From Rebecca billardiae RCC1528 (lineage: Eukaryota > Protista > Haptophyta), in contig OZ251230.1 of assembly GCA_965240325.2 (NCBI GenBank), positions 2,046,001 through 2,110,000 on the forward strand: a stretch of DNA of 64,000 nucleotides. Reading direction: 5' to 3'. Positions 6,301 to 43,289 of this stretch are shown in pieces; position 1 is the stretch's first letter; each line of letters opens with the position of its first letter. The translations under genes were made by a program, and so were the position numbers. The notes under the pieces are model-generated. The model did not search any database. It had not been told where the DNA came from and saw only the letters and a program-made list of their open reading frames with translations.

Positions 6301-7300
6301 CTGCATGCTGCAGGAAAGCCGCTCTGGCTGGGCTGCTGCCCCTTCTGCATGCTGCAGGAAAGCCGCTTGGGCTGGCAGCTGCCTGCTGGCAGCGGCGCCT
6401 GCGGAGTGCTAAGCCCTTGACACTGTGAACGAGATGTGCCGCGCCGGCTGGGCTGCTGCCCCTTCACCGCGCCGGCTGGGCTGCTGCCCCTTCACCTGCT
6501 GAAGGAAAGCCGCTCGGGCTGGGCTGCTGCCCCTTCTGCCTGCTGCAGGAAAGCCGCTCGTGGGCTGGCAGCTGCCTGCTGGCAGCGGCGCCTGCGGAGT
6601 GCTAAGCCCTTGACACTGCAAGCGCGTTGTTCGGCGCCGGCTGGGCTGCTGCCCCTTCTGCATGCTGCAGGAAAGCCGCTCTGGCTGGGCTGCTGCCCCT
6701 TCTGCCTGCTGCAGGAAAGCCGCTCGTGGGCTGGCAGCTGCCTGCTGGCAGCGGTGCGTGCTGAGTGCTAAGCTCTTGACACGGCGAGCGCGATGTTCCG
6801 CGCCGGCTGGGCTGCTGCCCCTTCTGCATACTGCAGGAAAGCCGCTCGGGCCGGCTGCCCTTCTGCATGCTGCTGCAGGAAATCGCATCGCCTGCGGCTG
6901 CGGTTTGCTTAGCCAGGGGCTTGACACTGCACGTGCAATGTGCAGCGCCGGCTGGGCCGCTGCCCCTTCTTCCGCATGATGATGCAGGGAAGCCGCTCGG
7001 GCTGACTGCACTTTCTGCATGCTGCTGCAGTAAATAAGGCACGCCTGTGTTGCTTGGCAGCTGCCTGCTGGCAGCTGCGCCTGTGGTGTGCTGAGCCCTT
7101 GGCACTGTGAGCGCGATGTTCCGTGCCATTGCAGGGCAGCTGCCCCTTCCTCTGCATGATCGATGATGCAGGAAATTAGCTCGGGCTGGCTGCCCCTTCT
7201 GCCTCCTGCTGCAGGCGATCACGCATGCCTGTGTTGCCCTGCAGGCAGCTGCCTGTGGGCAGCGGCGCCTGCAGCTTGCAGGGCCCTCGAAACTGCGATC
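3330..7300. repeat. Complex modular satellite (core GCTGCCCCTTCTGCATGCTGCAGGAAAGCCGCTC) with higher-order duplications
   Basis: Dozens of copies of the core alternate with a module of about 75 bp (GGCAGCTGCCTGCGGGCAGCGGCGCCTGCGGAGTGCTAAGCCCTTGACACTG...). Larger blocks are duplicated at about 734-bp (4881/5615) and 1,510-bp (4536/6046) spacing. Further copies lie at about 8690-8880 and 9520-9700. Confidence 0.92.
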
Positions 7301-18687: not shown

Positions 18688-21600
18688 CTAGCCGCACAGG
18701 TTGTGCAGCGCGGTGACGGCGGTGGCGACGGCGGTGGCGAGCAGCTCGTTGATCGCCTCGCCCGTCGCGCCGCCCTGCGAGAGGAGGCGGTCGAAGATGA
18801 TGGGCACGAGCACCGTGAGCGCGATGATGATCGGCTCCTCGAGCCCGAGCGTCTGCGCCTCGGCAAGGACCCAGCTGAAGAGGAGCCAGCGCGTCTGCGC
18901 CGCTCCGAAGGTGAGCGCGAACGCGACGGCGAGGAGAGCGAGCACGGTGAAGATGCCCCACATCGCGAGCCACGCGAGCGCGAGCTTGACGCGCGGCGGC
19001 GGCGTGAGCGCGCGCATGCTGCGCCGCAGCAGGCCGAGCCAGCCGGCCATGCGCTGCGCCTCGCGCCGCGCCTCGTCGGCCACCATCCCATCGTACCACG
19101 CGACGAGCTCGGAGAAGCCGATCGCGCCGTTGCCGTTCGTGTCGAGGTCGTTGGCGAGCTCCTGCACGCGGCGCGGCCGCATCCGGAAGCCGAGCGACTG
19201 GATGAGCCGCGCAAACTCGTCCGTGTCCACCGCGCCGTTGCCGTCCGCGTCGAATGCGCGGAACTTGAGGCGCAGCAGCTCGAGGGTCTCCGCGTTGAGC
19301 GCACTCCCCTCCGGCGGCTCGCTCAGCGCGGCGACTGACTCGCCGGCCTCGCTCGGCGTCTGCGGCACGCTGCCCGTCGCGAAGGCGAGGGAAGGCCCCG
19401 CCGTGCGCCCCTCGCGCACATCGGCCGCGCCGTGCGAGCCGACTTGCTCGGGCGGCGGCGGGATCGGCCGCAGGCTCGCCGCCGGCGTGGCGGCGGTGGA
19501 CCCCGCGGTGGAGGGCGGCGGCGGGCTCGGGGGCGGCGGCTCCGCCGCAACGTCCGCGGCCGGCTCCTCAGGCGCGATCCTAGACGGCCGGGCAGACCCG
19601 ACGCCGGCGCGCAGCGAGGCGTTGGAGCTCGGCCGGCGCGCGCCCGCGGGGGCCTGCGTCTGCGCCGTGCGCGGTGCGCCGCCGTGCGCGCACGCCGCCG
19701 TCTCAGGGGTGCCGACGGGGCGCGAGCGGCGCGGCTCGGCGACATCGCCCAGGGCGCTCACGGCACTGCCGCCGACCTCCAGGTCGGGCTCGTCGGTGGG
19801 GTGCACCGGCGCCGGGCTCGCGCCGCCGAGGATCGCCGCGACCACGCGCCGAACGGGCGACACCGTCGCCGTGCCAGCCTGTGCCGAGGCGGACCCCGCC
19901 GGCGCCCCCTCGGCCGCCTCCGGGTGGATGGGCGCCTCCGGGTGGATGGGCACCCCGCGCTCACCGCGCGGCGTCGTCACACCTCGGGCGGGCGCCGCCG
20001 CGGGCGCGTGGCTGGCAGCGGCGAGCAGCGGAGCGTCGAGGGCCGCGCCGCCGGCCGCGGTGGGCGCGGTGCGCGGCGGCGACTGGTGCTCAGGCGTGGA
20101 GCACTCCGAGGCCTGCTGCCAGGACAGCCAGCTCCTCCGCCCGGGACCCACAGCCTCGCCAGCGCCAGGACTGAATCCTTCCACCGCCCTTGATCCAGCG
20201 CGGCGCGCGCCGGCGCTGCTCGAGGCGAGCTCGTCGAGCGCATCGAACGCGCTCGACTGCGCCGCGCGGTCGCCACCGCGAACGCGGGCCTCGGTGCGCT
20301 CATCGCCACCGCCACCGCCGCTGCCCGAGGTGCGAGGCGTGCCTGCGCCCGAGCTGTCCGACTTGACCTCCTGGTCAGCGAGCACCTGCTCTCGTGAGCG
20401 CTGGGCACGCGAGCGCGCGAGCGCGAGGTCCGCGGGCGCCGCCGCGCGCAGCGCCGAGCCCGCGCGCCCGCGCCGGTCTGACACAATGCGGCGCAGCGCG
20501 AGCGGGCTCGCGGCGCGGTAGCTGCCGTTCGCGACGCTCGTGCGCACGGCGCTCGCAAAGGGCGCGCGCCGGCGCTCCCGCTCGGCGAGCTCGGCCTTGA
20601 GGAAGGCGGCAAAGACGCGCTTGCTCAGCGGCGCCGAGCGCCGGCCGTAGCCCCAGCGGAAGACGGCGCGGAAGAGGACGAGCGCGGGCGCGGTGAGCGC
20701 GGCCGTGAGCAGCGCGGTCAGAATGGCGGAGACCAGTGAGACGCTCGGTGCTGCCGACGCGGGCGGCGCGTCGCTCCCGGAGTAGAGCATGCACGTGATC
20801 ACGAGCCCGAGCATCGCGATGCTCCAGAAGATCTGCGCGAGCTCCGCGCGCTTGGCGTCCTCAGGGTCCGCGAACCAGATGCCCAGGAGGGAGTGGTCGG
20901 TGGAGACCTTGGCCGCGACGAGGCGCACGACGCGCGTGAGCGTGTGGTCACGCGTGCGGTCGGCTGCGCGCGCGCGCCGCTCGCGCAGCTCGGGCGCGGC
21001 CTTGTCGACGGCACGCCGCGCCTTGCGCCCGCGCGCGAAGCGCTGCATCGTGAGCGCCGCCTGCCGCCGCTGCTCGGCCAGGTAATCGTCGAGGTCGTCG
21101 AGCCTCGCCTCGAGCCGGTCGGCGAACGCGCCGCCCTCCGCGCCGCCCGCCCCAGCGCGCTCGTGCGGCGCGATCTCCTCGCCGCCGTCGCGCGCGGCGG
21201 CGGTGGCAGCGGCAGCGGTGGCGGCGAGACCAGTTGCACCCGCGGTCGGCTCGCGTGCGCGCGCCTCGGCGTCGCTCGGTGGCGACGAGCTGGGAGGCGG
21301 CGGCCGGTCGGCGCTGGCCCCACAGCCGCCTGCATGGATGCCTGCGCGGATGCCGCGCGATTGGCGCGAGGCGGCGGTGCCGACGCTTCCGCCAGTGCTG
21401 CCGCGGCGGTCGCCGGAGCTGGCGCGGCGGTCAGTCGCGCCGGGCCCGACCTCGGCGGGGCTCCAGGTCGTGCCGCCAAAGAGCGCGTCCTCCTCCTGCA
21501 TGCGCCGCTGCTCGCGCCTCTTGAGCCACTGGCGCAGGCCGCCGCTGCCGCCGCTGCCTCCAACCGCGCCCGCGTCGCCGGCGGGCGGCTGCGGCGCGTC

Positions 21601-24600
21601 GGCCAGCAGGAGCTGAAGCCGGCGCGCGCGCTCGCTCGAGTCGCGCACGTCGCGCGCACCAAAGAGACCGACGGTGAGCGCGCACGCGATCGCCATGCTC
21701 ACAACCAGCCAGAAGATGTACGGGTTGGCGTCGATCACGGGCGGCGCGCCCACGCCCACCGCGGCGGCGAGGTCGTCCCCGCCGAGGGTGTTCACGTTGA
21801 AGCTCTCCACCTCCTCCGCCGCACCCGCGGCGGACGGCGGCACGCTCACGCCCGCAAAGTCGGTCTGCGCGGCGCGCGCGCGAGGAGGGAGGAGAGAGGC
21901 GGGCGGATACGCGCAGCAGGAACGCCAGTGGGGGCGCGGCGGGGGAGAGGGACGCGCACGGTGCGCGTGAGTGCCGGCGGTGCGTGGTGCAGGCCCGCGG
22001 CAGAGCGCCGAGCGCGCGGCGGGGCGCGCGCACACACCAGGTGCGTGCACGCGCAGTAGCGTGCCATCGTGCCGTCGCCAGCCGCCGAGGGCGCGACGAG
22101 CGTCTCGCAGCCGTCATCGACCCACGCGTGGCGGTACGCGTCCCACCACACACAGCCCCAGCCGCCCGGACCGCCCGCCTCCGCCAGCCCGGGCACCTCG
22201 ACCAGCACGCGCGAGTCGTCGGCGAGGTTGTTGATGGTGAGTGCCTGCCCGCTCGCCGCGCTCAAGAGCGTGACGGAGAAGACGGGCGTCACCAGCCCCG
22301 AGGCGAGGCGCGTGCCGTTGGTCTGCGTGGTCGGGTCGCCGTGCACGTTGCGCGCCACGCTCCAGAGCACCACGTCAACGCCGCCCACAAGCTGCTCCAC
22401 CGGCACCGCGCCAAACACGGCACCCGGCACGCCCACCGAGCCCGCGCCGCCCGGCCCGCTGAGGCTCGCGTTGCGCAGCGCGGCCGGCGTGGAGCGCGCC
22501 GCGGACACGTTGACCGAGGAGGCGACCGCCTCGTACGGCGCCTCGCCCGCGACCGCGCCGGCGAGCAGCGCGGCGGCCAGCCCGCTCACCGCCGCGCTTG
22601 CTGCCTGCCCGATCGCCTCGGCCTGCGCCGCGCCGCTCGACGCGGAGTCGGCGGAGAAGTCGGTCGCGGCCGCGGCGACGAGCGCGGCGTCGGTCGCGCG
22701 CAGCAGCGCCGACGCAGTCGCCGCGTCCACGCCAGACTCAGCCGAGCCCGACGCGATCGCGGCGACCTGCGCGAGCCCGCTGGCCTGCGCCTCCGCATCG
22801 ATCGAGCCGGCGGGCGCGCCCTCGAGCACGGCCGCGAGCGCGCCCGCGGACGCGGCGCGCACCTCGGCGGTGGGCGCGCCCGAGCTCGCGGCGCCCGCGC
22901 TCAGCTCAAGCAGCGCGCCCACCGCGCTTGCGCTCTCGCTCGCGTTGCCCGCCGCGCTCGTGCCGCCGAGCAGCCCGGCGAGCGCGCTCACGAGCTGCGT
23001 CGCCTCGTCCGTCGCGCCGACCGCGAGCGCGGCGCGCGCGCGCGTGAGCGCGCTCGTGAGCGCGGTGCGCGCCTCGTCTGCGCTCGCGCCCGTGCCGAGC
23101 GCGGCAGGCGCGCTCACGCGCACAGCTGCCTCGGCGACCGCCGCGCCGCCGAGCGCGTCCGTCACGCGCAGGCGCGTGGTGCGGTTGCCCGCGGGCAGCA
23201 GCGCCGTGACGGCGCTCGCGGTGGTCGCGGCGCCGAGCGAGACGTCGCGCGCCGCGTCGACTGCGCCCAGCGCCAGGGCGGCGGGCGCGTGGCTGAAGGC
23301 GAAGAGCAGCGGCAGGTCGTCCTCGTCATCATCCGTCCACCCGTCCGCGCGCAGCGCAAAGCGCGTCTCGAGCGCCACGCCCGCGCTCGGCGCGACGGCG
23401 AGCGCGCCGCCGTACGGCGGTCGGTTGATTGCAACCCGCACCTCGCCGTATGCCGGCTGCGCACCGCCCGTGACCTGCAGCCGGAACGAGTAGACCGCGC
23501 CGGGCGTGAGCGCGCCGGAGCGGAACGCGAGCGTCGGACCGAGCGCACCCGTCGTCGTGACTGCCGCCCGGTCTGAGAGGTCGAGCTCGGCGCCCGCGCC
23601 GACGAGCTCGCCCGCAGCGCCGACCCGCAGCACGGACCACGCGTACGCGTACGAGGCGAGGCCGGCCGCCTCGCGCGCAAGCGACTCGTCGTCCAGGCTC
23701 GTCGAGATCGCGAGCCGCTCGGTGTTCAGCTCGAAGACCGCGGGGTACTTGATACGCGCAAGCGGCGCAAAGGCGAGGGTCGGCACGGCGCCGGGCACGA
23801 CGAGCAGCCGCACAGACGCGGACGCGGGCGCGCGAGCCTCCGCGCTGTCGGCGGCGCGCACGCTCACGGCGAGCGTGTACTCGCCTGGCGTGAGTGTGCG
23901 CGCGCGCAGCTCGAAGACCGCCGCGCTCGCGTTGGCGTCGGCAGCGTCGAGCGCGATCGGCTCGGCGCTCGTCGCGTTGGCGAGCGTCCACGCGAACACG
24001 AGACCGCCGACGTCGCCGCCGTCCGCGCCGTCCGCGCTGTCCACCTCGGGGTCGAAGGAGGCGGACGCGTCGACGCGCAGCGGCTCGTCGGCGGGCACGC
24101 GCCGGTCGCCGCCCGCAATCACCGCGCGCAGCGGCTCGCGCGACACGACGACGCGCACGCGCGCCGTTGCGCTCTGCGTCGGGCTCGCGAGCATTGCCGC
24201 GCTGAGCGCGAGCGCGTACGTGTGTCCCGCGCGCAGCGAGTGCGGCCGCAGCACCAGCACCGCCGAGGTGGCGCCGCCGAGCGCGGGCGCGCCTACGGCG
24301 GCCGCGCTCACGTTGGCGCCGCTCGCCGTGTGCACCACGCCCTCGAGCGCCCACGCGAAGCCCATCGCCGGCTCGAAGCCGAGCGGCCAGCACGGCGCGA
24401 GCGAGGCGAGACCGCGCAGCAGCGTGCTCGCGCCTGCGCGCGCGCGCAGCTCAGGCGCGCCGTCAATGGCGAGAAGCGGGCTCGCGCCGTCGCCGCGGCC
24501 GACGGCCCACTCGACGGGCGCCGAGGGCACGCCGAGGAAGGAGGTGACGCGCAGCACGAAGACAAAGCCGCCCGCCACGCCGAGCTCGGCCGATGCGCCG

Positions 24601-27600
24601 TCGCCGCCCAGCTCCAGCACGGCCGCCGACGCGGGCAGCGTGCGCAGCCGCGCGTTGAGCGACGTGGCGCGCACAGAGCGCGTGGGGTCGACGCGCCACG
24701 AGTACGAGGGCGCGCGGATGCCGCCGCGCGACGACGCAGACGCGTCGAGGCGCAGCGCCGCGCCCGGGCAGCTCGAGATCTGCGACGGGCCCGAGACGGC
24801 GCCGACCGGCACCGGGCACCGGATGCCCTCGCCGCACGGCGCGTCCGCATCGACGGACGCCGACGCGGCCGCCGAGAAGCGCTCGGCCGCGCACGGCGTG
24901 CCGCACAGCGCAGGCACGAGCGCGCCCGCGCGCACTCCAATGGCCGCACCGGGCGCGACGCGTGTGTGCGCCGTGAGCTGCACGACGAGCGTCGAGTCGT
25001 CGGCCCAGTAGCACTGCGGCGCGCCGCGCCCATCGCCGCGCACGAGCTCGAGCGTGGCATCGTCGAGCACGGCCGCGCACGCGCCCACGGCCGTGCCCAT
25101 GCCCGCGCGGTCGGTGGGCTGCGCGTCGAAGCGCAGCAGCAGCGCCGTCGCCGCGCGGTTGAAGGCCACCGACTCGAGCACAGGCGCGTGCAGCCCCACG
25201 AAGGAAAAGGTGGGCGCACCGGCTGCGGGTGAGTACTGCTGGCCGTTGAGCGACACGCGCACGGTCGCAACGCCCGCCGCGCCGTACCGCGTGCGCACGA
25301 GCACGCTCGAGGCGTCGACGGACGTGGGCGGCTGCGCGAGCGCGTTGCCGAAGCGCACGCGCACGAGCGCGCCGCCGTCGAGGCCGCCGTCAAAGCCGCT
25401 GCCGTGCAGCGTCACCTCCGTGCCACCGGCGCCATCGCCGAGCGCCGGCTCGAGCGCGTCGAATGTGGGGTGCGCATACGTGGTGAAGTCGAGGCGCGAG
25501 GAGGTGGTCGACGCCGCGGTGCCGCCGCCGAGCGAGAGCTCGAGCGGCGCGCTCGAAGGCGCGGAGGCGCCGTCGGCGACTGCGGGCAGCGTGCACCGCG
25601 CGCGGCTTGTGGCGCCGGCGGGCGCGTCAGCGGGCACAGGCAGCAGCTCCGCCGGGGCGACGCATTCCGCCGCACTGCCGCGCACGCAGCACAGCTGCCC
25701 GTCGCCGTAGTCGGCAAAGCCTGAGCCCACCAGCGTGACCGCTGTGCCGCCCTCGACGGGGCCGCTCGGCGGGCTGAGCGAGGCGATGCGCACCGCGCCC
25801 ATGTCGTACAGCGCAAAGGCCACCGGCTCGAACAGCCCAGGCACGTCCACGTCGGCGGGCGCGCCCACGCCCGCGAGCGCGACCCCCACGGTGAACGCAC
25901 CCGCCGACGTGGCGGGCGGCATCGCGCACTGCAGCCGCGCGTCGCTGATCACCGTCGCGGCCGAGAGGAGGATGCCGTCCTCCGCACCCGCCTCCACACC
26001 GCGCGCCGCGTCGTCGGCGGGCGTGAAGGCGCACTGCGCGCCGCCGTACGCCTCGGCGCCATCGGCGAGCTCGAGGAAGCCCGCGCCGCGCAGCTCGAGT
26101 GCCGCGCCCGTCGCGCCCAGCGGCGCGCCGGCCGGGAAGGCGGAGAGCACCACCACGCGGATGGCGGGCGGGGGCGGCGGCGGCGGGCTCGGCGGCGGGA
26201 GGGGCGGCGGCGAGCTCGGTGGCGGCCGCGGAGGCGGCGAGGGCGGCGGCGAGGGTGGTGGCGAGGGCGGCGGCGAGGGCGGCGGCGCGGGCGGCGGGCT
26301 CGGCGGCGGGCTGGGCGGCGGCGAGGGCGGCGGCGTGGGTGGCGGGCTCGGCGGCGGGCTCGGTGGCGGGCTCGGCGGAGGCGGCGGCGGGGACGACGGC
26401 GGCGGCGAGGGCGGCGCCGAGGGCGGCGACGGTGGTGGGAACGGCTCCACCCGCGGCGGGGGTGGCGGCGTCGGCGGGCTCGGCGGTGGTGCTGGCGGTG
26501 GTGATGGTGGCGGCGGGCTCGGCGGTGGCGCGGGTGGCGGGACTGGCGGCGGCCGAGGCGGCAGGCTCGGGGGCGCGCTCGGCGGCGGCGCCGGGGGCGG
26601 CGGCGGTGGGCTTGGCGGCGGCGCGGGTGGCGGGCTCGGTGGTAGGCGCGGCGGTGGGCTCGGTGGCGGCGCGGGCGGCGGGCTCGGCGGTGGGCTCGGT
26701 GGCGGGCTCGGGGGCGGTGAAGGCGGCGGTGGCGGTGGCGGCAGGCTCGGTGGGCTCGGCGGCGGGAACGGCTGCGTGCGCGGCGGCGGGGGCGGGCTCG
26801 GCGGCGGGCTCGGCGGCGGTGGGCTCGGCGGTGGCTGCGGCGGTGTCGGTGGTGGAGGTAGCGGCGGCGGGCTCGGCGGTGGCGGCTGCGGCGGTAGTGG
26901 CGGTGGGAGCGGCGGTAGCGAGGGCGGCGACCTCGGCGGCGCCAACGGCGGCGCCGACGGCGGGGGGCTCGGCGGCAGCGGCGGCGGCGAGAGTGGCGGG
27001 CTCGGCGGTTGCGACGGCGGACTGGGTGGCGGGCTCGGCGGCGGGCTCGGCGGTGGGCTCGGCGGTGGCGGCGATGGTGGCGGCAGCGGCGGCGGGCTTG
27101 GTGGGCTCGGCGGCGGGAACGGCTGCGTGCGCGGCGGCGGCGGCGGGCTCGGTGGAGGGCTCGGCGGCGGCGGGCTCGGTGGGTCCGCAGGCGGCGAGCT
27201 CGGCGGCGCGCTCGGTGGCGGACGCGGCGGCAGGGCCGGTGGCGGCGAGTGCTGCACGCACGAGCCGTCGTCCACCTCCGCGCCCGAATCAAAGTTGGCC
27301 GCCGCCGCGTCCATGCAGCCGCTCTGCGCGGTGGCTGGCATCTCGAGCACTCCGGCGCCAATCTCGCTCGAGAGCTGCTCGGTCGAGAGCGCCTGCAGCG
27401 CGCCCAGCACGTCGAGGGCGCCGTCGGCGCTGGGCTGCAGCGCGGCGCAGACGATGCGCGCCGACGCCTGCTCGACCGCCACCACGCTCACCCAGCCGTC
27501 GGGCGCGCCCGCCGCGCTCGAGAGCCTCGCGCCGAGCTCGGTGCGCGCCGCCTCCGTCTCATAGTCGCTCGCGTCCGCATCGAGCGTGAGCGCAAAGTAG

Positions 27601-33600: not shown

Positions 33601-36600
33601 ACCAGCACGTCATGTGACGCGCCGTCACCGTCAAGGTCGCCGAGCGCAACGCACGACGCGCCGAACCCCGAGCCCGCGCCTGCGCCCGCGCCGGCAGCCG
33701 TGATCTTGCGCGAGTCGCGCACCGTGCCGTTGGTTCGGAGGTAGAGCACCCACATCGAGCCGCTCCCGGAGCCGTCTGTCGAGTCGCCAGGCGCGCCGAC
33801 AAGCGCGTCGACGACGCCATCGCCGTCAACGTCGCCCGGGCCGCATGCGCCCGCGCCGAAGAGGGCGGAGGGTGTCAGGCTGTCGGCGAAGCCGCCCTCG
33901 CTCTCGGCGATGCGCGCGTAGCCCTTGGCGCTGCCATCCGCGCTCAGGAAGAGGATGTACACCGCCGCCTCCTGGGAGGCGCCCACGAGCAGGTCGATCA
34001 CGCCGTCGCCGTCCACGTCGCCGAGCGCGCCCAGACCGGTGCCAAAGGCAGTTGCGGCGACGGCCGCGAGCGCGCCCTCGCCGGCCGCGAGGGTCGTGTA
34101 CTCCTTGACCGTGCCGTTGGCGCGCAGCCGCAGCACGTACAGCGCGGGCGCGCCGCTCGCCGCACCCGTGCCCACAACCACGTCAGGGACGCCATCGGTG
34201 TCAAGGTCGCCGAGCGGCGCCGCGGAGGAGCCGAACTGGCTGTTGTTGGCGAGCTCGGCGAAGTGCTCGCCCGTTCCAGGCGTGACCCTTGTCGTGTTGC
34301 GCACGGTGCCACGCGCGTCGAGGAAGAGCACGAACGCAGCGCCGACGCTCGCGCCGGCCGAGCTCTCACGTGGCGCGCCGACGAGCACGTCGGGCACACC
34401 GTCACTGTTCACGTCGCCGAGCGCGGCGCTCGAGGCTCCGAAGCCGTCACCCGCGCTGAGGTTGAGGCCAATCTCGGTGGGCGAGAGCGCCACCGTGGCG
34501 AGCACGATCTCTGGCGGCGGCGGCGGCGGGCTCGGTGGCGGGCTCGGCGGAGGGGCGGGCGAGGAGATGAGGATGTCGAAGGCATCACGGACGATAGTGT
34601 CCGCGCCGCCGCCGCCGTGGATGTAGTCCACGTCGCCGTCGAGCGTGTTGATGTAGTCGTCGCCCGCGCCGCCGAACACGCGATCGTAGGCGCCCGCCGC
34701 GCCGTAGATGCGATCGTCGCCGGTGCCGCCGTACATCGTATTGTTCACAGCGCCGGCGGTGGCGCCGTTGGTGGACAGCACGCCGCCGCGCAGCACGTCG
34801 TCGCCGGCGCCGCCGTGCAGCTCGTTCGTGGTCGTGGCCGCACTCCCGTCGGCGGTGCCGTAGCCACCCGTGCCACCAATGAGCTCGTCATTGCCGGCGT
34901 CACCGTACAGCACGTTCACCGCGCCCGCGCCGACGCCGCCGTACGAGCCCCAGCCGCCGTTGCCACCAGTGAGCGTGTCGTTGCCCTCGCCGCCGGACAG
35001 CACGTTGTGCGCCTGCCCCGACGCGAACGACGCCACAGTCGACTTGCCCGAGTTGCCACCCGTGATCGCGTCCGCGCCCAAGCCGCCGCGGAGCGTGTTG
35101 CTCACGTCCACGCCGAGCTGAGGTTGGTTATCCCAGGGGTCCGTGGGGCCAGCGTTGCCGCCCGTGATCACGTCGGCGCCTTCGCCGCCATACGCCGTGT
35201 TGATCGCGGTGCCGCCATAGCTGCCGTTGAAGGTCCAGCTCGCGTCGCCGCCCACAATCACGTCGTCGCCGAGGCCGCCGTCGAAGATGTTGGTCGCGGA
35301 GCCTCCTGTCCCTGTGTCCCAGCTGTAGGCGCCGTCGCCACCCCACATGAAGTCATTGCCCTCACCGCCGGCGAAGACGTTGAGGACATCGCCGCCAAAG
35401 CCGTTCGTTCCTCCGCCCCACGCGGCTCTGCCACCGCGCATCATGTCGTCGCCGTTGCCGCCCGAGAGGGCGTTGTACGCGCTACCGCCGACGCCGTGGT
35501 CCCAGCCAAAGCCGCCGTTCCCACCCCGTAGGACATCGTTGCCCGCGCCACCAGAGAGCGTGTTCACGGAATCGCCACCCCGCGCGTGGTCGCCTCCCCA
35601 GCCGCCTCTACCGCCAGACAGCTCGTCGTTGCCATCGCCGCCCAGCAGCGTGTTGTTCGCCCTGCCGCCGTGGCCGCCTTCGTAGCCCCAGCGGCCACTT
35701 CCGCCGAACAGCATGTCATCACCCGCGCCACCAGACAAGATGCTCGTTGCATCGCCGCCATGGGCGTGTGGGCCGTCGGCCCACCCGCCAGAGCCGCCGC
35801 TCAGCCTGTCGGCGCCATCGCCGCCCGAGAGCGTGTTGTGCGCGTCGCCCCCATGAGCACCCTCCGTGGAGTTGCTCCACGCCCAGCCGCCCGTGCCGCT
35901 CGACAGCTGATCATCTCCCGCGCCGCCGTGGACGACGTTGCGCACATCGCCACCCACGGCGCCCGCCAGCCAAGCCTCGCCGGCTTGGCCGGACCACACG
36001 CGGTCATCTCCATCGTCACCGTAGAGGTAGTTCACCGCGTCTCCGCCGCGTTGGCCGGGCGACAAGTGGCCTATGCCGTCTCCGGCATCGCCACCCCGGA
36101 TGGTGTCCGCACCCCCGAGGCCGTTGATGAGGTTCGCCACACTGTCGCTCGTGAACGGCACGCCCTTGTTCGCTGTCGCAGCATCCACGCCCGCTAGTTC
36201 ATCGTCGGCCGCGCTGCCCGTCGCGACGTTCAGGTTGGCTGGCGGCGGCGGGCTCGGCGGCGGGCTTGGCGGCGGGCTCGGCGGCGCGGCGGGTGGCGGT
36301 GGGCTGGGCGGCGGCGCCGGAGGCGGCGGCGGCGGCGCGGGCGAGCTGCACGGCGGCAGCGACGGCGGGGAGACAGTGGCATTCGGTGCCGTCACTGCGC
36401 CGCACACGCTCGTGTCGCTCACGTCCAACACGCTCAGCGCCGTGAGCAGTGCGAGCTCGGTCGGCAGCGCACCGCGCAGCAGCGTGTTGTTCTGCACGAA
36501 CACGGCCCCAGCGCCGGTGAGCGCACCGAGCGCGGAGGGCAGCACGCCGCTGAGCGAGTTGTGGCTGAGCACGAGCTCTGTGAGAGCGCTCAGCGCGCCG

Positions 36601-39600
36601 ATCGCCGATGGCAGCTCGCCCGTCAGCCGGTTCGCCGAGAGGTCGAGCTCGACAAGGCTGCTCTGCGTGGCGTTCGAGATCTGGCCCGCGGGCAGCGTCC
36701 CTACAAAGCGGTTGCCCCACGCGTACAGCTGCTGCAGGGACGCGATCGTGAAGAGCGTGACCGGCAGCGTGCCCGTGAGGCGGTTGGCCGAGATGTCGGC
36801 GTAGGACAGCTGCGCCAGCGCGCCCACCGCCCAGGGGATGCTGCCCGTCAGCTCGTTCTGCTGCACCTCGAGGCGCCGCAGCGCGGTGAGCGCGAGCAGG
36901 TCGGCTGGCAGCGCGCCAGTGAACGCGTTGTTGAAGAGACGGAGGTATTCCAGCTCGCTCAGCCGCCCGAGCTCCGTGGGCACGGAGCCATTGAGCCCGT
37001 TGTAGTCGACGTGCAGCTTGTACAGCTGGCTCGCGCTGCCGAGCTCGGTCGGCAGCGCGCCGCTCAAGCCGGGGCTGCAGGTGCCGAGGTTGATTGTCTC
37101 GACCGCACCGAGCGCGCCAAACTCGGTCGGCAGCGGCCCCTCGAGGGAGGTGAGCCATGCGGTGATGTCGGTGAGCGCGTCCAGTGCGCCCAGCTCGGTT
37201 GGCAGCGTGCCACTCACGCCCGACGCGGGAACGTGGATGTAAGCGAGGTGGCTGAGGCCGCCGAGCTCGGTGGGCAGCTGCCCGCCCACGGCCGACAGGT
37301 ACAAGTCGAGCAGGTGCAGCGACGCGAGGCCCCCGACCTCCGACGGGAGCACGCCCGTGATCGAGAGCGAGTTGAGCTCGAGAGACGTGAGCTCGCTCAG
37401 GTTGCCGATGGAGGACGGCAGCGTGCCAGTCAGCAGCGTGTCGATGAACGTGAAGGTGACGAGGCCAGTCAGGACGCCGATTTCAGGCGGGAGGGCGCCC
37501 GAGAAGCGGTTGGACTCGATCGCGAGCTTGGTGAGCGCGGTGAGCGCGCCGAGGGCGGGCGGGAGCGTGCCATTGAGCGCGTTGCCCGACACTTCGAGCG
37601 CCGTGAGCGCGGTGAGCGCGCCGATCGCCGGCGGCAGCGCGCCCGTCAGCTCGCAGTCGTCGAGGTCGAGGTACGTGAGCGCGCTGAGCAGCCCGATCTC
37701 GGACGGGATCGTCCCGCTGAACGAGTTGATGTCGAGCTCGAAGTTGGTGAGCGCGGTGAGCAAGCCGATGGAGGGTGGGATCGGCCCCGTGAGCGAGTTG
37801 GAGTCGAGCTCGACAAACTCGAGTGCGGTGAGCGCGCCGAGGTCTGCCGGTAGCGAGCCGCGCAGCTTGTTCCGGCCACCGTCCGCCTCGAGGAAGCGGA
37901 GCGCGGTGAGCCGCGTGAGGTTGGCGGGGAGGTACCCCGTCAGGCGGTTCGCCTGCAAGCGTAGCTCGCTAAGCGCCGTGAGCTGCGCGAGCTCGGACGG
38001 CAGCGCGCCCGAGAAGGAGTTGTAGCCGAGTTGGAGCTGGCTCACGTTGGCGAGCTGCCCGAGCTCGGTGGGCAGCGTGCCCACCAGCCCCGCGTCGCTC
38101 ACGTCGAGGCGAAGCAGCAGCGTGAGCAGTCCCAGCTCGGTCGGCAGCGTGCCAGTGAGCCCGGTGTACGGCAGCACAAGCTCGTCGCACGACGACGGAT
38201 CCGCCACGCACGCCTGGTACTGCGCATTCGCTTGGACAGTGGGTGCGGGCGGCGGGCTTGGCGGCGGCGGGCTCGGCGGAGGTGACGGCGGCGGGCTCGG
38301 CGGAGGTGACGGCGGCAGGCTCGGCGGAGGTGACGGCGGCGGGCTCGGCGGAGGTGACGGCGGCAGGCTCGGTGGAGGTGACGGCGGCAGGCTCGGCGGG
38401 CTCCGCGGTGGCGGGCTCGGCGGCGGGCTCGGTGGGGGAGCCGGCGGGCTCGGCGGGCTCGGCGGGCACGCCGGGAGAGGCGCCGGGCTCACGGCCGGGT
38501 TGACCTGCGCGCCGCACACGTCCGTGCCGGCCACGTCGAAGAGCGTGAGGTCGGTGAGGAGCGCGAGCTCGGACGGCAGCTCGCCGCCGATGAGCGACGC
38601 GTTGCCCACGTCGACGCTCACCAGTTCGGTGAGCAGCCCGAGCTCGGACGGCAGCGAGCCGCTGAACGACGTGCTCGAAGCCTCGAGCTGCGTGAGCGCG
38701 GCGAGCTCGCCGATTGAAGTCGGCAGCGTGCCATTGAGCGAGGTGCCCGACGCCTCGAACCACGTGAGGCGCGGCAGCAAGGCGCCAATCTCGGCGGGCA
38801 GCGTGCCCGTGAAGCCGTTCTGGCCGACTTGGAACTGCTCGAGGGAGCTCAGCGTGAACAAGCCGGAGAGGCTGCCGCGCAGCGCGTTGTCGTTCAGATT
38901 GAGCTGCGTCAGGTTGGCAAGAGCGGGCGAGGCGAGCTCGGTCGGAAGCGTGCCCGTGAACGAGCACTGGTCCAGTCTGAGCACGCTGAGAGAGCTGAGC
39001 GCGCTGATCTCTGTGGGCAACGGCCCCGTGAGGCTGTTGGCGTACGCCGTGAGCTGGTAGACGCGGCTGAGCCTCGCGAGCTCCGTCGGCAGCGGCCCCG
39101 TGAATGCGTTACCCCACGCATCGGCGCGGGTGAGCGCCGTGCACAGGCCGAGCTCGGTGGGCAGTGTGCCTGTCATGTCGTTGCTCCCGACGAAGAGGCC
39201 GACGAGCGACGTGAGCAGGCCCATCTCCGTCGGGATGCTGCCGACCAGGCCCTGCGCGCCGACGCTGAGGGAGGCCGTGCATGAGGATGGCGAGGCGAGG
39301 CACGCCGATACCTCCGCGGTGTCGCTGAACGCCGTCGGCGGCGGCGGGCTCGGTGGCGGGCTCGGCGGCGGCGCGGGCGGCACGCTGAGCGAGAGGATGC
39401 GCACCGCGCCGCTGCCCTGCGCGGCGGAGCCAATGGCGAGCTCGAGCGAGCCGTCGCCGTCCAGGTCGCCGAGCGCGCTCACGCGCGTGCCGAGCTGCTC
39501 GCCGTCGGTCAGCGTGCCCGGCAGCGTGCCGCTCGTTGACGAGAAGGCGAGCGCGCCGAGCACGCCGCCCGCGCTCGAGAGGCGCACGACGTACAGCTTG

Positions 39601-42266
39601 CCGCGCTCGGTGCCGCCATCGTCACTCAGGTGCGCGCCAATCGCCAGGTCGGGCACGCCGTCGTAGTCGATGTCGCCGATGCCGGCCACGTCGCCCGCGC
39701 CGAAGCGCTCGCCGCCCACGACGCCGCCCACTCCCGACGCCAGCGCCGTCTTTGCCTTGGCGGTGCCGCCCGTCGTGAGGAGCACGAGCCAGACCTCGTC
39801 GGCGCGTGTGCCGAGCGCGACGTCGGGCACGCCGTCGCCGTCCACGTCGCCCACGCCGGCGGCGGCGGCGCCGAGCGCGTCGTTGTCGGCGAGGCCGGCG
39901 CCGAAGCTGCCAAAGTTGGTGGCGAGCTGCTGCTCAGCCTTGACGGTGCCGTCACTGTTGAGGAAGAGCACGTACGCAGAGCCGCGGCCCGGCCCGCCGT
40001 CGTCGTCACCGGGCGCGCCCACCAGCACGTCGACGACGCCGTCGCCGTCGATGTCGCCGAGCACCGCGAGTGCGCTGCCGAACGCCGCCTGCGCCTTGAG
40101 CGTCGACACCAAGCCTCCGCTCTCGTCCGAGATCTTCTGCTCCGCCTTGACCGTGCCATTGCTGTGGAGGAAGAGGATGTACGCCGCGCCTGTGTTGGCG
40201 ACGCGGTCGTCGTCGCCGGGCGCGCCGACGACGATATCCGGCACGCCGTCGTCGTCCAGGTCACCGAGCGCACCGACGGCGTCGCCGAACCCGTCGCCCG
40301 CGTCGAGCGGCCCGACGAACCCGCCCTCCGCGGCCGAGATCGTCTGCAGCGCGCGCACGGTGCCGTTGGCGCGGAGGAGGAGCACGTGCAGAGCGCCGCC
40401 ACCGTCGACGCCGCCGAGCGGGTCGAGCAGCGCGGCGTCGCGCACGCCGTCCCCGTCCACGTCGCCCACGCCGATGGCGCCCGGGCGCTCGGCGATGCTG
40501 ATGTTTGCGACGGCGGCTGGGAGCGTGCCCGCAGCGGCCGACAGGATGAGCTCGCTCGCGAGCTGGGCGGCAGGCGGCGGGCTCGGCGGCGGGCTCGGTG
40601 GCAGGCTTGGCGGCGGGCTCGGCGGCGGGCTTGGTGGCAGGCTCGGAGGCGGGATCGGAGGCGGGCTGGGCGGTTGCGGGCTGGGCGGCGGGCTGGGCGG
40701 CGGGCTTGGTGGCAGTGTCGGAGGCGGGCTCGGAGGCGGGGTTGGCGGCGGCGGGCTGGGCGGCGGCCTCGGAGGCGGGCTGGGCGGTGGCGGGCTGGGC
40801 GGCGGCCTCGGAGGCGGGCTCGGCGGTGGCGAGGGTGGCGGGAGGTGCAGCCGCAGCCCGAGCACGTAGAGCGCGCCTGCATTGTTGACGCCGTCATCGT
40901 CCTCGAACGCACCCACGAGCAGCTCGGCGCGGCCGTCGCTGTCGAGGTCGGCGGCGCCGAGCCCAGAACCGAAGCCATCTCCGTCATCAAGCGGGCCGGT
41001 GATGCCGCCGCGCGTCGAGGAGACTTTCATCTCCGCCTCCACCGTCCCGTTCTGCGAGAGCAGGAGGATGTAGCACGCGCCGCGCCCGTCGCCACCGTCG
41101 GAGTCGCCCGGCGCGCCCACGGCGCAGTCTGGGACGCCATCGCCGTTCACGTCACCCAACGAGGCGACGCCGGTCCCGAAGAGGTCGCCGGTCGCGAGCG
41201 CTGCGCGGAGCCCTCCCGAGCCGTCGGTGAGCAGCCTCGACTCGCGCACCGTGCCGTTGGCGCGCATGAACAGCACGTGCGCGGCGCCGGGGCCCGCAGG
41301 GGACGAGGCCGTGCCCTGGCGCTCGCCGACGAGCAGATCGGGCACGCCGTCAGCGTCAACGTCACCCAGCGGCGCGACGGAGGAGCCAAAGAACTGCACC
41401 ACCGGTCCCGTGAGCCCGCCCTCCGTTGACGACACCTTCACCGACGAGGTGAGCGCGAACGTCGGCCACGAGAAGCCGAGGATGTACAGCGCGCCAGAAG
41501 CGCCGGTGCCCTCGCCGATCGCGCCGACGGCGAGCTCTGCGCTGCCGTCCGCGTCCAGGTCGCCGGCGAGGGCGAGGGAAGTGCCAAACAAGGCGGTTGA
41601 GCCGGCGCCCGCCGCGGATCCCGATACCACCGCGCCGCTTGCCACCGTGCCGTTTTCGCGCAGCCGCAGCAGGTGCACCTCGCCGACGGAGGAATCGGTC
41701 GAGGCGGCGTGCGGCGCTCCAATTGCCGCGTCGGGCACGCCGTCCGCGTCCGTGTCGCCGAGCTGCGTGCCTCCAAAGCCGAAGAGCGCCCCCTCGCCGA
41801 GCGCGGCAGGCAGGCCGCCTGCATCGTTCGACAGCCGGGTTGCCGCGCGCACCGTGCCGTTCGCGTGCATGAAGAGCACGAGCGCCGCGCCCGACTGCGA
41901 AGCGCCGCCATCGTCGGCGTGCGGGACGCCGACGAGCAAGTCAGGGACGCCGTCCTGGTCCAGGTCGCCAAGCGTGGCGACGCCGCCACCACCAAGGCGA
42001 TCGTTTGCTCCGAGGATGCCGGTAGGGACTCCGCCCTCCGTCGCCGAGAGCTTCACCTCCAACGATATGGCGCCGAAGTGCGGCGACGGCGGCGGCGGGC
42101 TCGGCGGCGGCGGGAGCGGGTTTGCTATGACTCCGTGCGAACGAGGGAGCAACAGCACGAGTACCGCCGCGGCCGCGACATCGTACAGGGTGCGCGGTGG
42201 TGTCGCACGGGGGCGGCGACAATGGCCCGTACACGCGCTGCGAGGCGATTCGCGCACGCCGTGCAT
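18688..42266 (-). CDS. Giant (about 7,801 aa) polycystin-1-like GAIN/GPS receptor: FG-GAP x3, LRR x2, RTX-like repeats, SPPP stalk, IPT, REJ, GPS, 5 TM, IQ, EF-hands
   Basis: Exon 1 is 42266-22038 (6,743 codons from MHGV..., with hydrophobic VAAAAVLVLLLPRSHG). The intron is 22037-21865 (GTGTGT...CGCAG) and exon 2 is 21864-18688. Splicing gives CVWWD..W..GC...RYCACTHL|TDF, a GPS motif. FG-GAP repeats (GDLDxDGVPDLLVGAP) lie at about 42070-40850, 40570-39380 and 34510-33330. Plant-type LRRs (LTGxLPxELGxL) lie at about 39330-38470 and 38240-36350, and GGxGxD repeats at 36240-34560. REJ-like NRPPYGG...W.D.....PL.F.F, IQ motif LTMQRFARGRKARR, EF loops DADGNGAVDTDE and DTNGNGAIGFSE. Confidence 0.88.
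30560..32200 (-). repeat. 411-bp (137-aa) higher-order tandem repeat within the SPPP stalk, at least 4 near-identical copies
   Basis: The marker AGGCGTGGC (the PPRLPP segment) recurs at 30670, 31081, 31492 and 31903, exactly 411 bp apart. More diverged copies extend to about 32750. Confidence 0.88.
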
Positions 42267-42450
42267 CCCCCTCGTACCTGGCGTCTCCGGCGTGGTTGCC
42301 GGCCCGCGCCCCAGTGGCAGGGAGACGGTTACGAGGCAGCTGATGGCCTGATGCGGGAATACGTATGGATACAGGATGAAGCAGTTCGTCAAAACTCAAA
42401 ATGACAAACTGTTTCGTCGGCTTTGCCTCGTGTGCTATTACAGTTTAGGG

Positions 42451-42475: not shown

Positions 42476-42675
42476 ACAACAGTATCAGCATGGCGTGTGC
42501 GGGTCGGCGCGTTGACCCTGGGCGGCCCAACCGAAGCCGGAGCCCGGCGGCGCGGGCTGACTATGAGCCGAAGGCGCCTAAGCCCGGCGATGTCGTCACC
42601 AGGCCCCACACTTCGTTGTAAGCGATGCTGTATCGTCATCATTGTCTCGGACCTCGGGCGGTCGGGATCTCACTC

Positions 42676-43289
42676 TCAGGGAGGCGTGCGCTCGTAGTCC
42701 CCGCTGCGGCCCCCGCTCTTCGCCTCCAGGCGGATGTCCGAGATCTCGATCTCCTTGGACGAGGCCTTGCACATGTCGTACAGCGTCAGGCCGGCGACAG
42801 AGACGGCCGTGAGCGCCTCCATCTCGACGCCCGTGGGCCCCCTCGCGCTCGCCGTCGCGCTGATCATCACGCTGTGCGCGGCTGCGTTGAGCGTGAGCTC
42901 GAGCTGCACGTTCGTGAGGGCGATGGGGTGGCACAGCGGGATGAGGTCGGCGGTGCGTTTGGCGCCCATCACGCCGGCGAGCTGGGCGACGGCGAGGGCG
43001 TCGCCCTTCTTCAGCTGGTTCTGCTCGAGCAGCTCGTAAGTGGCCTTGCCCAACTTGACCTGCGCGGATGCAACCGCGCGGCGCATGGCCGACCTGCGCC
43101 GCAGCACGTGCGTCACCGCCGTCAGCGCGGCCGGCGCTGAGTTGCGCAGGGCGAAGGCGCGCGCGCGTACTCGGGCTTGTCGGACACGTCGACCATCCGG
43201 GCTCTGCCGTCCTCGCCCACGTGTGTCAGCCTGGGCGGTTGCTTCATGATGGACATGGCGCGCCGGAAGACGCGCGATACGGCGGCCAT
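42676..43289 (-). CDS. moaC: Cyclic pyranopterin monophosphate synthase (molybdenum cofactor biosynthesis protein C), 2 exons, about 178 aa
   Basis: Exon 1 43289-43171 (MAAVSRVFRRAMS..., presequence-like; LTHVGEDGRARMVDVSDK). Intron 43170-43094 (GTACGC...GCTGAC...GCAG). Exon 2 43093-42676 with KKGDALAVAQLAGVMGAKRTADLIPLCHP, TGVEMEALTAVS, LTLYDMCKA and KSGG. Confidence 0.95.

What the first reader, a model, noticed from the sequence alone, without database searches (positions are those of the whole stretch)
18688..42266. Giant polycystin-1-like receptor (about 7,800 aa) with a modular adhesive tip on an extensin stalk and Ca2+-sensing modules instead of a channel
Seen: two ORFs join through a 173-bp GT-AG intron into one protein. 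The order is signal, FG-GAP propeller x2, LRR x2, RTX-like repeats, third FG-GAP propeller, about 2,300 aa of SPPP, IPT domains, REJ, GAIN/GPS and TM1. An IQ motif follows where animal PKD1 has PLAT. Then come TM2-3 (H.LLGIW...R...LY, similar to PKD1 HIWLSIW..R..WY), two EF-hands, and TM4-5 (F.....WL.S.......EP, as in PKD1), after which the protein ends. Established: PKD1 has 11 TMs, and the last 6 form the TOP/channel part. Inference: this is a 5-TM, channel-less, self-cleaving surface mechanosensor or adhesin that presents integrin-like, LRR and RTX heads on a long polyproline rod and couples to Ca2+/calmodulin inside the cell. I do not recognise this architecture from any described protein.
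Basis: partly seen in the sequence, partly recalled or inferred. Interest (0 to 1): 0.9.

Follow-up and report, generated by a model that had tools for sequence, protein, structure and literature searches.

The report
Giant stalked channel-less polycystin-1-like receptor
A very GC-rich haptophyte alga encodes a 7,801-residue surface protein that holds integrin-like, LRR and calcium-roll modules on a 0.7-micrometre proline rod, anchored by the front half of the kidney-disease protein polycystin-1 (REJ, self-cleaving GAIN, first five membrane helices), with calcium-sensing motifs and no channel half; it is one of about 90 such genes in this genome.

Summary
On the minus strand, a 6,743-codon exon (42266-22038) and a 1,058-codon exon (21864-18691) are separated by a 173-bp GT-AG intron that lies exactly at the GPS bond HL|T. 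Pfam confirms FG-GAP, LRR, RTX, TIG, REJ and an EF-hand pair. A family profile matches the GAIN domains of adhesion GPCRs (E 1e-10) and known IQ motifs.

Eighteen paralogues carry the GPS motif uninterrupted, and 13 end at the same C-terminus, which supports both the splice and the five-helix end. There is no PLAT and no PKD_channel.

A confident model of a compact relative (pTM 0.76) superposes on human polycystin-1 TM1-TM5 (Z 19.1, rmsd 2.8 Å; next hit Z 6.0). Profile-to-sequence searches did not reach polycystin-1.

The gene is not unique. The genome has about 90-100 paralogues, and relatives exist as unnamed or auto-named proteins in Diacronema lutheri, Pavlovales sp. CCMP2436, transcriptomes and marine metagenomes. 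The scan has flagged the family in other windows of this genome.

The proposed function (adhesion or tension sensing through a tethered agonist, modulated by Ca2+) is inferred. No RNA run was listed. My verdict is a new variant of a known kind.

The parts
42123..42266 (-). Start codon and N-terminal 48 residues, with a hydrophobic stretch (residues 30-41). Probably a signal peptide.
   Evidence: First ATG of the open frame. Hydropathy peak at residues 30-48. No signal-peptide predictor was available.
40857..42071 (-). FG-GAP beta-propeller 1 (residues about 66-470).
   Evidence: Pfam FG-GAP 1e-28 with 6 stretches in the first 675 aa. DxDxDG-like loops at 171, 236, 302, 372 and 440.
39237..40544 (-). 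FG-GAP beta-propeller 2 (residues about 575-1010). A 99-residue Ser-Pro linker (40557-40853) precedes it.
   Evidence: Pfam FG-GAP 6e-22 and FG-GAP_2 2e-10. Linker composition.
38493..39149 (-). LRR block 1 (residues about 1040-1258), with plant-type L[TS]GxLP repeats.
   Evidence: Pfam LRR_1 and LRR_14. Motif positions.
36387..38219 (-). LRR block 2 (residues about 1350-1960).
   Evidence: Pfam LRR_14 3e-42 and LRR_8 2e-28.
34587..36029 (-). RTX-like Gly/Asp-rich beta-roll repeats (residues about 2080-2560).
   Evidence: Pfam HemolysinCabind 2e-35. About 21 GGxGxD-like motifs. The module recurs at more than 100 places in the genome.
33345..34499 (-). FG-GAP beta-propeller 3 (residues about 2590-2974).
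   Evidence: Pfam FG-GAP_3 1.5e-12 and FG-GAP 1.8e-8.
26151..33344 (-). Ser-Pro3-4 rod, 2,282 rod residues, about 0.7 micrometre if it forms a polyproline-II helix. A 77-residue Cys-containing island (27249-27479) interrupts it.
   Evidence: 72% Pro, 18.5% Ser, 354 SPPP, 3 Tyr. The 12-bp periodicity is degenerate, with 65-77% matches, so this is not a perfect array.
24390..26069 (-). IPT/TIG domains and flanking beta-rich region (residues about 5400-5959).
   Evidence: Pfam TIG 5.6e-17 with 2 stretches, the best at residues 5600-5681.
22983..24389 (-). REJ domain (residues about 5960-6428).
   Evidence: Pfam REJ 1.1e-39, profile positions 40-452 of 452.
22038..22982 (-). GAIN domain up to the GPS His-Leu (residues 6429-6743). 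Contains CxWW...W...GC...CxCxHL.
   Evidence: A family profile with this sequence as first row hits the GAIN domains of ADGRL3 (1e-10, both subdomains), ADGRG6, latrophilin-1 4DLQ and BAI3 4DLO. Invariant C283, G297, C298, C316, C318, H320 and L321.
21865..22037 (-). 173-bp GT-AG intron, placed exactly between the Leu and Thr of the GPS cleavage site.
   Evidence: Sequence. Eighteen paralogues have the motif uninterrupted, and nine of them align contiguously across the junction. The intron is not a repeated element.
21805..21864 (-). Post-cleavage stalk (the 'Stachel'), beginning TDFAG.
   Evidence: T1, D2, F3 and P9 are invariant, and A4, G5, V6 and V8 nearly so, across 15 paralogues.
21661..21717 (-). 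TM1 (exon-2 residues 50-68).
   Evidence: Hydropathy 2.4. Maps to helix 45-79 of the model that superposes on polycystin-1.
21010..21081 (-). IQ-type motif in cytosolic loop 1 (exon-2 residues 262-285).
   Evidence: The Q, R, G and R positions are nearly invariant in 16 paralogues. The family profile hits the IQ motifs of RSP23 (3e-6), myosin-Va and Sp17. Pfam IQ scores only 14.3 bits against a cut-off of 20.3.
20671..20841 (-). TM2-TM3 hairpin (residues 342-398), preceded by the conserved DHSLLGIWF...RAELxQ motif.
   Evidence: 22 invariant columns in alignment A1. Maps to model helices 124-145 and 203-232.
19075..19293 (-). EF-hand pair in cytosolic loop 2 (residues about 858-930), with two canonical 12-residue loops.
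   Evidence: Pfam EF-hand_7 3.6e-11. Loops at 872 and 908. pLDDT above 90. Fold matches S100P and centrin at Z 11-12.
18793..18969 (-). TM4-TM5 hairpin (residues 966-1024), with the conserved FG..QTR.LL.SW...Q....EEP motif.
   Evidence: Alignment A3. About 85 loci in the genome. Maps to model helices 301-329 and 332-373.
18688..18777 (-). Conserved C-terminal cytosolic helix (...GGATGEAINELLAT...) and the stop codon.
   Evidence: Thirteen paralogues share this C-terminus and stop position. In public relatives the block lies at the very end of the protein.

Best explanation
This is a real gene with at least two exons. It encodes a 7,801-residue type-I-start, five-pass membrane glycoprotein of a Pavlovales-type haptophyte.

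Shown:
- Outside the cell, a modular tip of three FG-GAP propellers, two LRR solenoids and an RTX-type calcium roll sits on a Ser-Pro3 rod of 2,282 residues.
- The rod ends in TIG domains, a REJ domain and a GAIN domain with a canonical GPS site.
- The membrane part has the fold of the peripheral TM1-TM5 domain of polycystin-1. It lacks PLAT, the TM6-TM11 channel-like half and the C-terminal tail.
- The two long cytosolic loops carry a conserved IQ-type motif and a canonical EF-hand pair.

Inferred:
- The protein cleaves itself at HL|T and stays non-covalently joined.
- The tip binds a surface, particle or partner cell, aided by extracellular Ca2+.
- Pull on the rod strains or removes the N-terminal fragment. 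This frees the conserved TDFAG stalk to act on the five-helix bundle as a tethered agonist, as proposed for polycystin-1 and adhesion GPCRs.
- The output is read or gated on the inside by Ca2+ through the EF-hand pair and the IQ site.

The gene is one member of a repertoire of about 90 genes that share the base and differ in the tip.
For: Gene model:
- Intron borders and phase.
- Nine paralogues align without a gap across the junction.
- Eighteen paralogues have CxCxHLTDF uninterrupted, and 13 run in one ORF from the GPS to the same C-terminus.

Domains:
- Pfam hits.
- GAIN profile against solved GAIN domains, E 1e-10.
- IQ profile hits.
- EF-hand fold at Z 11-12.

Membrane fold:
- AlphaFold2 model of relative P0100:394-792, built with a 35-row alignment that includes this gene: pLDDT 78.5, pTM 0.76.
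- Foldseek's six best hits are all polycystin-1 chains.
- VIA-align gives Z 19.1, rmsd 2.8 Å over 195 residues against PC1 3063-3610. The next hit has Z 6.0.
- Our TM1-5 align one to one with that model's helices, at 25-32% identity in the conserved blocks.

No channel half:
- No PKD_channel match in the window or beside any REJ locus.
- PLAT occurs at only 2 unrelated loci.
- Public relatives carry TIG, REJ, GPS and EF-hand but never PLAT or PKD_channel, and they end right after TM5.

Expression of the family: two relatives (P0016, P0100) are MMETSP transcripts.

Topology: both the IQ motif and the EF-hands fall on the cytosolic side.
Against: - No RNA run was listed for this gene, so neither the splice nor expression is observed directly.
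- The polycystin-1 fold was shown on a relative only 26% identical to this gene. This gene's own model left the helices at pLDDT 40-70.
- Profile-to-sequence searches of the TM blocks never reached polycystin-1.
- AlphaFold2 may have learned the PC1 structure during training.
- Cleavage, ligand binding, tension sensing, Ca2+ binding and proline hydroxylation or glycosylation are all untested.
- Without TM6-11 and the C-tail, none of the known output routes of polycystin-1 is present.
Confidence: 0.6

Rival explanations
1. Passive structural fibre. The protein is a surface hair, coat or scale-tethering fibril, the five helices are only an anchor, and nothing is signalled.
For: Micron-scale proline rods and many paralogues with interchangeable tips resemble wall and flagellar hydroxyproline-rich glycoproteins such as Chlamydomonas agglutinins and mastigonemes (PMC11015965).
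Against: The cytosolic IQ motif, the EF-hand loops, the stalk and polar residues within the TM blocks are conserved across distant paralogues and across species. A mere anchor would not need them. A GAIN domain with an intact GPS is kept in at least 103 loci.
Confidence: 0.2
2. Accessory subunit of a separate channel. The five-helix base docks onto one of the genome's PKD2-type channels and gates it, so receptor and channel are split between two genes instead of fused as in PKD1.
For: The genome has at least 8 clear PKD2-type genes with Polycystin_dom plus PKD_channel; the one at L001 also carries a C-terminal EF-hand. In Chlamydomonas, giant proline-rich proteins pair with PKD2 (PMC11015965).
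Against: In the PC1/PC2 complex it is TM6-TM11, absent here, that interdigitates with PC2, while TM1-TM5 is peripheral (PMC7728438). No PKD2-type gene lies beside this gene or any REJ locus. No pairing was tested.
Confidence: 0.15
3. Broken or split gene. The 173-bp insert is a disruption, so the locus yields a secreted N-terminal protein, a separate five-helix protein, or nothing.
For: This is the only one of the 18 paralogues read across the GPS that has anything inserted there. No RNA evidence exists.
Against: The insert has GT...AG ends, and its removal restores the invariant HLTDF exactly and in frame. Both exons stay open for 6,743 and 1,058 codons with all domains intact. Exon 2 has no start codon or signal peptide of its own before TM1.
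Confidence: 0.05

Closest known systems
Polycystin-1 family (human PKD1, PKD1L1-3, PKDREJ; sea-urchin suREJ)
   Same: The order REJ, then GAIN/GPS with HL|T, then stalk, then TM1-TM5. The fold of the peripheral TM1-TM5 domain (Z 19.1 against 8z6b_A residues 3063-3610). A large adhesive ectodomain.
   Different: No PLAT between TM1 and TM2. No TM6-TM11 channel-like half and no C-terminal tail, whereas the PC-1 family members are described as sharing one 11-TM topology (PMC7728438). An IQ motif and an EF-hand pair sit in the cytosolic loops. The ectodomain is a 2,282-residue proline rod with FG-GAP, LRR and RTX modules instead of PKD/Ig repeats. Sequence similarity in the TM part is too low for HMM detection.
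Unnamed Pavlovales proteins in GenBank: Diacronema lutheri KAG8462819.1 and KAG8459354.1; Pavlovales sp. CCMP2436 KAJ1635852.1 and KAJ1633484.1 ('REJ domain-containing protein' or 'hypothetical protein')
   Same: The same base: TIG, REJ, GPS, TM1, IQ, TM2-3, EF-hand, TM4-5, then the end of the protein.
   Different: They are shorter (2,088-3,751 aa as annotated) and have different or truncated tips. None carried a functional name, and the D. lutheri genome paper does not contain the words polycystin or REJ (PMC8379373).
Chlamydomonas MST3 and its 7 relatives (poly-hydroxyproline proteins with a partial PKD2-like domain completed by SIP)
   Same: A giant extracellular proline-rich helix, with LRR and other modules, anchored by a polycystin-type membrane domain that is incomplete relative to animal polycystins (PMC11015965).
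   Different: MST3 keeps the channel (PKD2-like) half and pairs with PKD2. This protein keeps the opposite, non-channel PC1 front half and has REJ and GAIN, words that do not occur in the MST3 paper.
Adhesion GPCRs (latrophilin, ADGRG6, etc.)
   Same: A GAIN domain with GPS and a tethered stalk directly before the first membrane helix, and a modular adhesive ectodomain.
   Different: Five helices with a PC1-type fold, not a 7TM bundle. The best adhesion-GPCR match to the membrane model is only Z 5.3.
Ectocarpus Esi0130_0068 (male-gamete REJ/GPS protein)
   Same: An algal REJ plus GPS membrane protein, proposed to act in cell-cell recognition (PMC4700764).
   Different: It is 1,427 aa with 6-7 predicted helices and a polycystin-channel hit. 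It has no rod, IQ motif or EF-hand.

Membership tests
Polycystin-1 family | REJ domain in the ectodomain | tested here: met
   Pfam REJ 1.1e-39, 136.7 bits against a cut-off of 25.
Polycystin-1 family | GAIN domain with a GPS HL|T site just before TM1 | tested here: met
   Family profile against solved GAIN domains, E 1e-10. The motif CACTHL|TDFAG is split by the intron. Close paralogues pass Pfam GPS. The joined sequence itself was not searched.
Polycystin-1 family | Fold of the N-terminal TM1-TM5 domain | tested here: met
   Tested on relative P0100, not on this gene's own model: Z 19.1, rmsd 2.8 Å, 195 residues, PC1 3063-3610, next hit Z 6.0. Our helices map one to one onto that model. This gene's own model was too uncertain.
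Polycystin-1 family | Detectable sequence homology of the TM region to PKD1/PKD1L | tested here: not met
   Three profiles (A1, A3, A4) searched against all PDB chain sequences, including PC1, gave no PC1 hit at E up to 10.
Polycystin-1 family | PLAT domain between TM1 and TM2 | tested here: not met
   No PLAT hit in exon 2 at E up to 1. Only 2 PLAT loci exist in the genome, neither near a REJ gene.
Polycystin-1 family | 11-TM topology with a TM6-TM11 channel-like half (PKD_channel / Polycystin_dom) | tested here: not met
   Five helices, then a stop 34 residues after TM5. No PKD_channel match in the window. The stop position is conserved in 13 paralogues and in public relatives.
Adhesion GPCR | Seven-helix secretin-like bundle after the GAIN domain | tested here: not met
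   Five helices. No 7tm hit in Pfam. ADGRF1 reaches only Z 5.3 against 19.1 for PC1.
Extensin / hydroxyproline-rich glycoprotein | Ser-Pro3-5 repeats | tested here: met
   354 SPPP and 65 SPPPP in 2,282 residues.
Extensin / hydroxyproline-rich glycoprotein | Tyr-based cross-linking motifs; Pro hydroxylation and O-glycosylation | tested here: not met
   Only 3 Tyr in the rod, so the Tyr motifs are not met. Hydroxylation and glycosylation cannot be tested with these tools.
Integrin-alpha-type FG-GAP propeller | Seven FG-GAP blades with Ca2+ loops | tested here: inconclusive
   18 FG-GAP stretches fall in three clusters of about 385-435 residues with DxDxDG-like loops. Blade number was not modelled.
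RTX repeat proteins | Tandem GGxGxD nonapeptides forming a beta-roll | tested here: met
   HemolysinCabind 2.3e-35 and about 21 motifs. A bacterial type-1 secretion signal is not expected here and was not sought.
IQ calmodulin-binding motif | [ILVM]QxxxRGxxx[RK] on a helix | tested here: inconclusive
   The motif is present and nearly invariant in the family, and the profile hits the IQ motifs of RSP23, myosin-Va and Sp17. However, Pfam IQ is below its cut-off (14.3 against 20.3 bits), and binding is untested.
EF-hand | Paired helix-loop-helix with canonical 12-residue loops | tested here: met
   EF-hand_7 at 43.7 bits against a cut-off of 30. Loops at 872 and 908. Z 11-12 to S100P and centrin.
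MST3-type mastigoneme anchor | Partial PKD2-like (channel) transmembrane domain | tested here: not met
   No PKD_channel or Polycystin_dom hit. The membrane fold matches the non-channel part of PC1.

The most novel reading that the evidence does not exclude
The REJ-GAIN-five-helix unit is a free-standing receptor that signals by itself through its own Ca2+ modules, not a truncated polycystin-1. Animal polycystin-1 would then have arisen by fusing such a unit to a PKD2-type channel. Pavlovales would keep the unfused form and have expanded it into a repertoire of about 90 receptors with interchangeable tips on micron-long stalks, used for recognising partners, prey or surfaces.
Probability: 0.3. 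Interest if true: 0.8.

Novelty: new variant of a known kind. Interest (0 to 1): 0.65.

Why it matters
What the peripheral TM1-TM5 domain of polycystin-1 does is still open, because in animals it always comes fused to PLAT and a channel-like half. This family offers that domain alone, behind an intact REJ-GAIN-stalk unit and next to built-in Ca2+ sensors, in about 90 natural variants. It therefore gives a system for asking whether the front half can signal by itself, and how polycystin-1 was assembled in evolution.

For algal biology, it points to a large, undescribed class of micron-long surface receptors in haptophytes. Such receptors could underlie adhesion, mating, prey capture or interactions with viruses and bacteria.

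Tried and rejected
Searches that found nothing or were cut short:
- No RNA run was listed.
- The search for homologous proteins found nothing in three tries: exon 2 whole, the exon-1 REJ region, and exon-2 residues 930-1058. Length limits and low-complexity words are the likely reasons, because the exhaustive profile search did find relatives.
- The feature search of the ESM Atlas gave scores below 0.8, so it offers no lead.
- One genome search failed.
- The look-up of encoding contigs had no record of P0100.

A slip of mine: one paralogue query was cut out of frame. I used it only to locate paralogues, and it was superseded.

Structure and fold:
- AlphaFold2 on this gene's own exon 2 with 15 paralogues resolved only the EF-hand pair and the IQ helix. 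The TM helices stayed at pLDDT 40-70, and a fold search with that model returned only EF-hand proteins.
- Profile-to-sequence searches of the TM2-3 and TM4-5 blocks against PDB sequences never hit polycystin-1.

Complex prediction (EF-hand pair with IQ segment): no verdict, score 0.00. This is not evidence either way, so I do not claim the intramolecular EF-hand/IQ clamp.

Readings considered and rejected:
- The intron as a copy of a mobile 'introner'. Only one weak partial match exists elsewhere in the genome.
- A hidden downstream channel exon. There is no PKD_channel match in the window, the stop position is conserved, and the downstream ORFs have no Pfam hit.
- The long plus-strand ORFs over the rod. 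They are Gly-rich mirror images of the Pro codons.
Full report
**Gene structure.** The minus strand carries an open frame of 6,848 codons (21846..42392) followed by one of 1,120 codons (18688..22050). The first ATG is at 42266. Between them, 21865..22037 starts GTGTGT and ends CGCAG. Exon 1 ends on a whole Leu codon and exon 2 begins on a whole Thr codon, so removing the 173 bases gives ...CACTHL|TDFAG.... Read through, the frame stops after 63 more codons, before any membrane helix. Other frames in this 70-80% GC DNA break every few hundred codons, so the two frames are not chance. All searches used each exon by reference.

**Homology supports the splice.** The genome (72 Mb, 41 contigs) has 103 REJ matches in giant open frames of up to 21,132 codons. 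I fetched 20 of these loci. In nine of them the last residues of exon 1 and the first residues of exon 2 align to adjacent bases. Eighteen carry CxCxHLTDF uninterrupted. Thirteen run in a single ORF of 974-1,347 codons from the GPS to the same C-terminus and stop. The junction and the end of the protein are therefore family features. The intron is peculiar to this copy and is not a repeated element. No RNA run was listed.

**Ectodomain.** Pfam gives the following hits:
- FG-GAP 7e-66, in three clusters
- LRR_14 7e-44, in two blocks
- HemolysinCabind 2e-35
- TIG 6e-14
- REJ 1e-39

Short Ser-Pro linkers separate the tip modules. The rod has 2,282 residues, 72% Pro and 18.5% Ser, 354 SPPP and only 3 Tyr. 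At 0.31 nm per residue, the value I used for a polyproline-II helix, it would be about 0.7 micrometre long. Its DNA is a degenerate 12-bp periodicity rather than a perfect array. A profile of the last 321 residues of exon 1 with paralogues and public relatives matches the GAIN domains of ADGRL3 (1e-10, both subdomains), ADGRG6, latrophilin-1 and BAI3. Pfam GPS passes its cut-off at 103 places in the genome, including the close paralogues.

**Membrane and cytosolic part.** Exon 2 has five hydrophobic helices. With the N-terminus outside, both long loops are cytosolic:
- Loop 1 carries an IQ-type motif whose Q, R, G and R positions are nearly invariant. The family profile hits the IQ motifs of RSP23, myosin-Va and Sp17, although Pfam IQ is below its cut-off.
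- Loop 2 carries an EF-hand pair (Pfam 4e-11) with two canonical loops. It has pLDDT above 90 and fold matches at Z 11-12.

The loops stay open and in frame in 13 paralogues despite different lengths, so they are coding. There is no PLAT and no PKD_channel here. PLAT occurs at two unrelated loci, and none of the 30 PKD_channel matches lies beside a REJ locus. The TM4-5/C-terminal block occurs at about 85 loci, mostly inside the same giant frames as REJ.

**Is the anchor polycystin-1-like?** By sequence, no. Three profiles found no PC1 among PDB chains. By fold, yes. An exhaustive profile search found relatives that carry TIG, REJ, GPS and EF-hand but never PLAT or PKD_channel. In those relatives the TM4-5 block lies at the very C-terminus. 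A compact relative, P0100:394-792, modelled with a 35-row alignment that includes this gene, gave pLDDT 78.5 and pTM 0.76. Foldseek's six best hits are polycystin-1 chains, though with weak E values of 0.05-0.24. VIA-align gives Z 19.1, rmsd 2.8 Å over 195 residues against PC1 3063-3610, and the next chain has Z 6.0. That range is the peripheral TM1-TM5 domain, whereas TM6-TM11 forms the channel with PC2 (PMC7728438). Our five helices align one to one with the model's helices at 25-32% identity in the conserved blocks. Two caveats apply: the fold is shown on a relative, not on this gene itself, and AlphaFold2 may know the PC1 structure from training.

**Distribution.** Named relatives come from Diacronema lutheri and Pavlovales sp. 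CCMP2436. They are annotated only as hypothetical, 'EF-hand domain-containing' or 'REJ domain-containing' proteins. Two others are MMETSP transcripts, so family members are expressed, and the rest come from marine metagenomes. The genome's GC content and scarcity of introns fit D. lutheri (PMC8379373), and the words polycystin and REJ do not occur in that paper. My literature searches found no description of this family. Earlier notes of this scan describe the same family in other windows of this genome. My tests agree with them.

**Mechanism and rivals.** The anatomy is shown; the mechanism is inferred. The proposed sequence is: Ca2+-dependent binding by the tip, force transmitted along the rod, strain on the cleaved GAIN domain, action of the conserved stalk on the five-helix bundle, and Ca2+ input through the EF-hand pair and the IQ site. 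The rivals are a passive fibre, an accessory subunit for one of the PKD2-type channels, and a broken gene. A predicted EF-hand/IQ contact gave no verdict, so I do not claim it.

**Verdict.** It belongs to a large Pavlovales family that has no description in the literature I could search. It is best called a channel-less, PLAT-less variant of the polycystin-1 kind.

Noticed in passing
window 27249-27320 (-): A small Cys-bounded motif, GCxDxxAxNFDxxAxxDDGSC, sits in an island inside the rod. Similar motifs (GCT..A.NY...) open the public relatives P0011 and P0151 just before their proline linkers. It may be a recurrent mini-domain at rod boundaries.
   Followed up: partly
window 21865-22037: The only intron of the gene sits exactly on the GPS scissile bond. 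It is absent from all 18 paralogues read there, and only one weak 103-base match exists elsewhere (C1:2189544-2189648). It looks like a recent, copy-specific intron gain.
   Followed up: partly
G000:C19:1573818-1631915 and C19:1907269-1912381: A tandem cluster of at least four nearly identical family members, spaced about 18 kb apart, with a fifth 0.3 Mb away. These are the closest paralogues of this gene's membrane part but lack its RTX module.
   Followed up: no
G000:C16:881490-881921 (-): A PKD_channel match lies inside a 6,448-codon open frame with no REJ nearby. This giant protein seems to keep the channel half instead, reminiscent of Chlamydomonas MST3.
   Followed up: no
G000, many loci (e.g. 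C23:1199765-1200799, C35:673107-676634, C1:1565175-1579208): The RTX-like Gly/Asp module of this gene recurs at more than 100 places. These include two other REJ genes (C7 about 857-863 kb, C8 about 2,156-2,162 kb) and many shorter ORFs, which suggests module shuffling.
   Followed up: no
window 27629-33343 (+): Plus-strand ORFs of 874-1,296 codons lie over the rod. They are the Gly-rich reverse complement of the Pro codons, with strong GC skew. They are artefacts, not genes.
   Followed up: yes
window 16976-18127 (+) and 42625-43140 (+): The flanking ORFs have no Pfam match. The 3' neighbour is convergent and ends about 560 bp from this gene's stop.
   Followed up: partly
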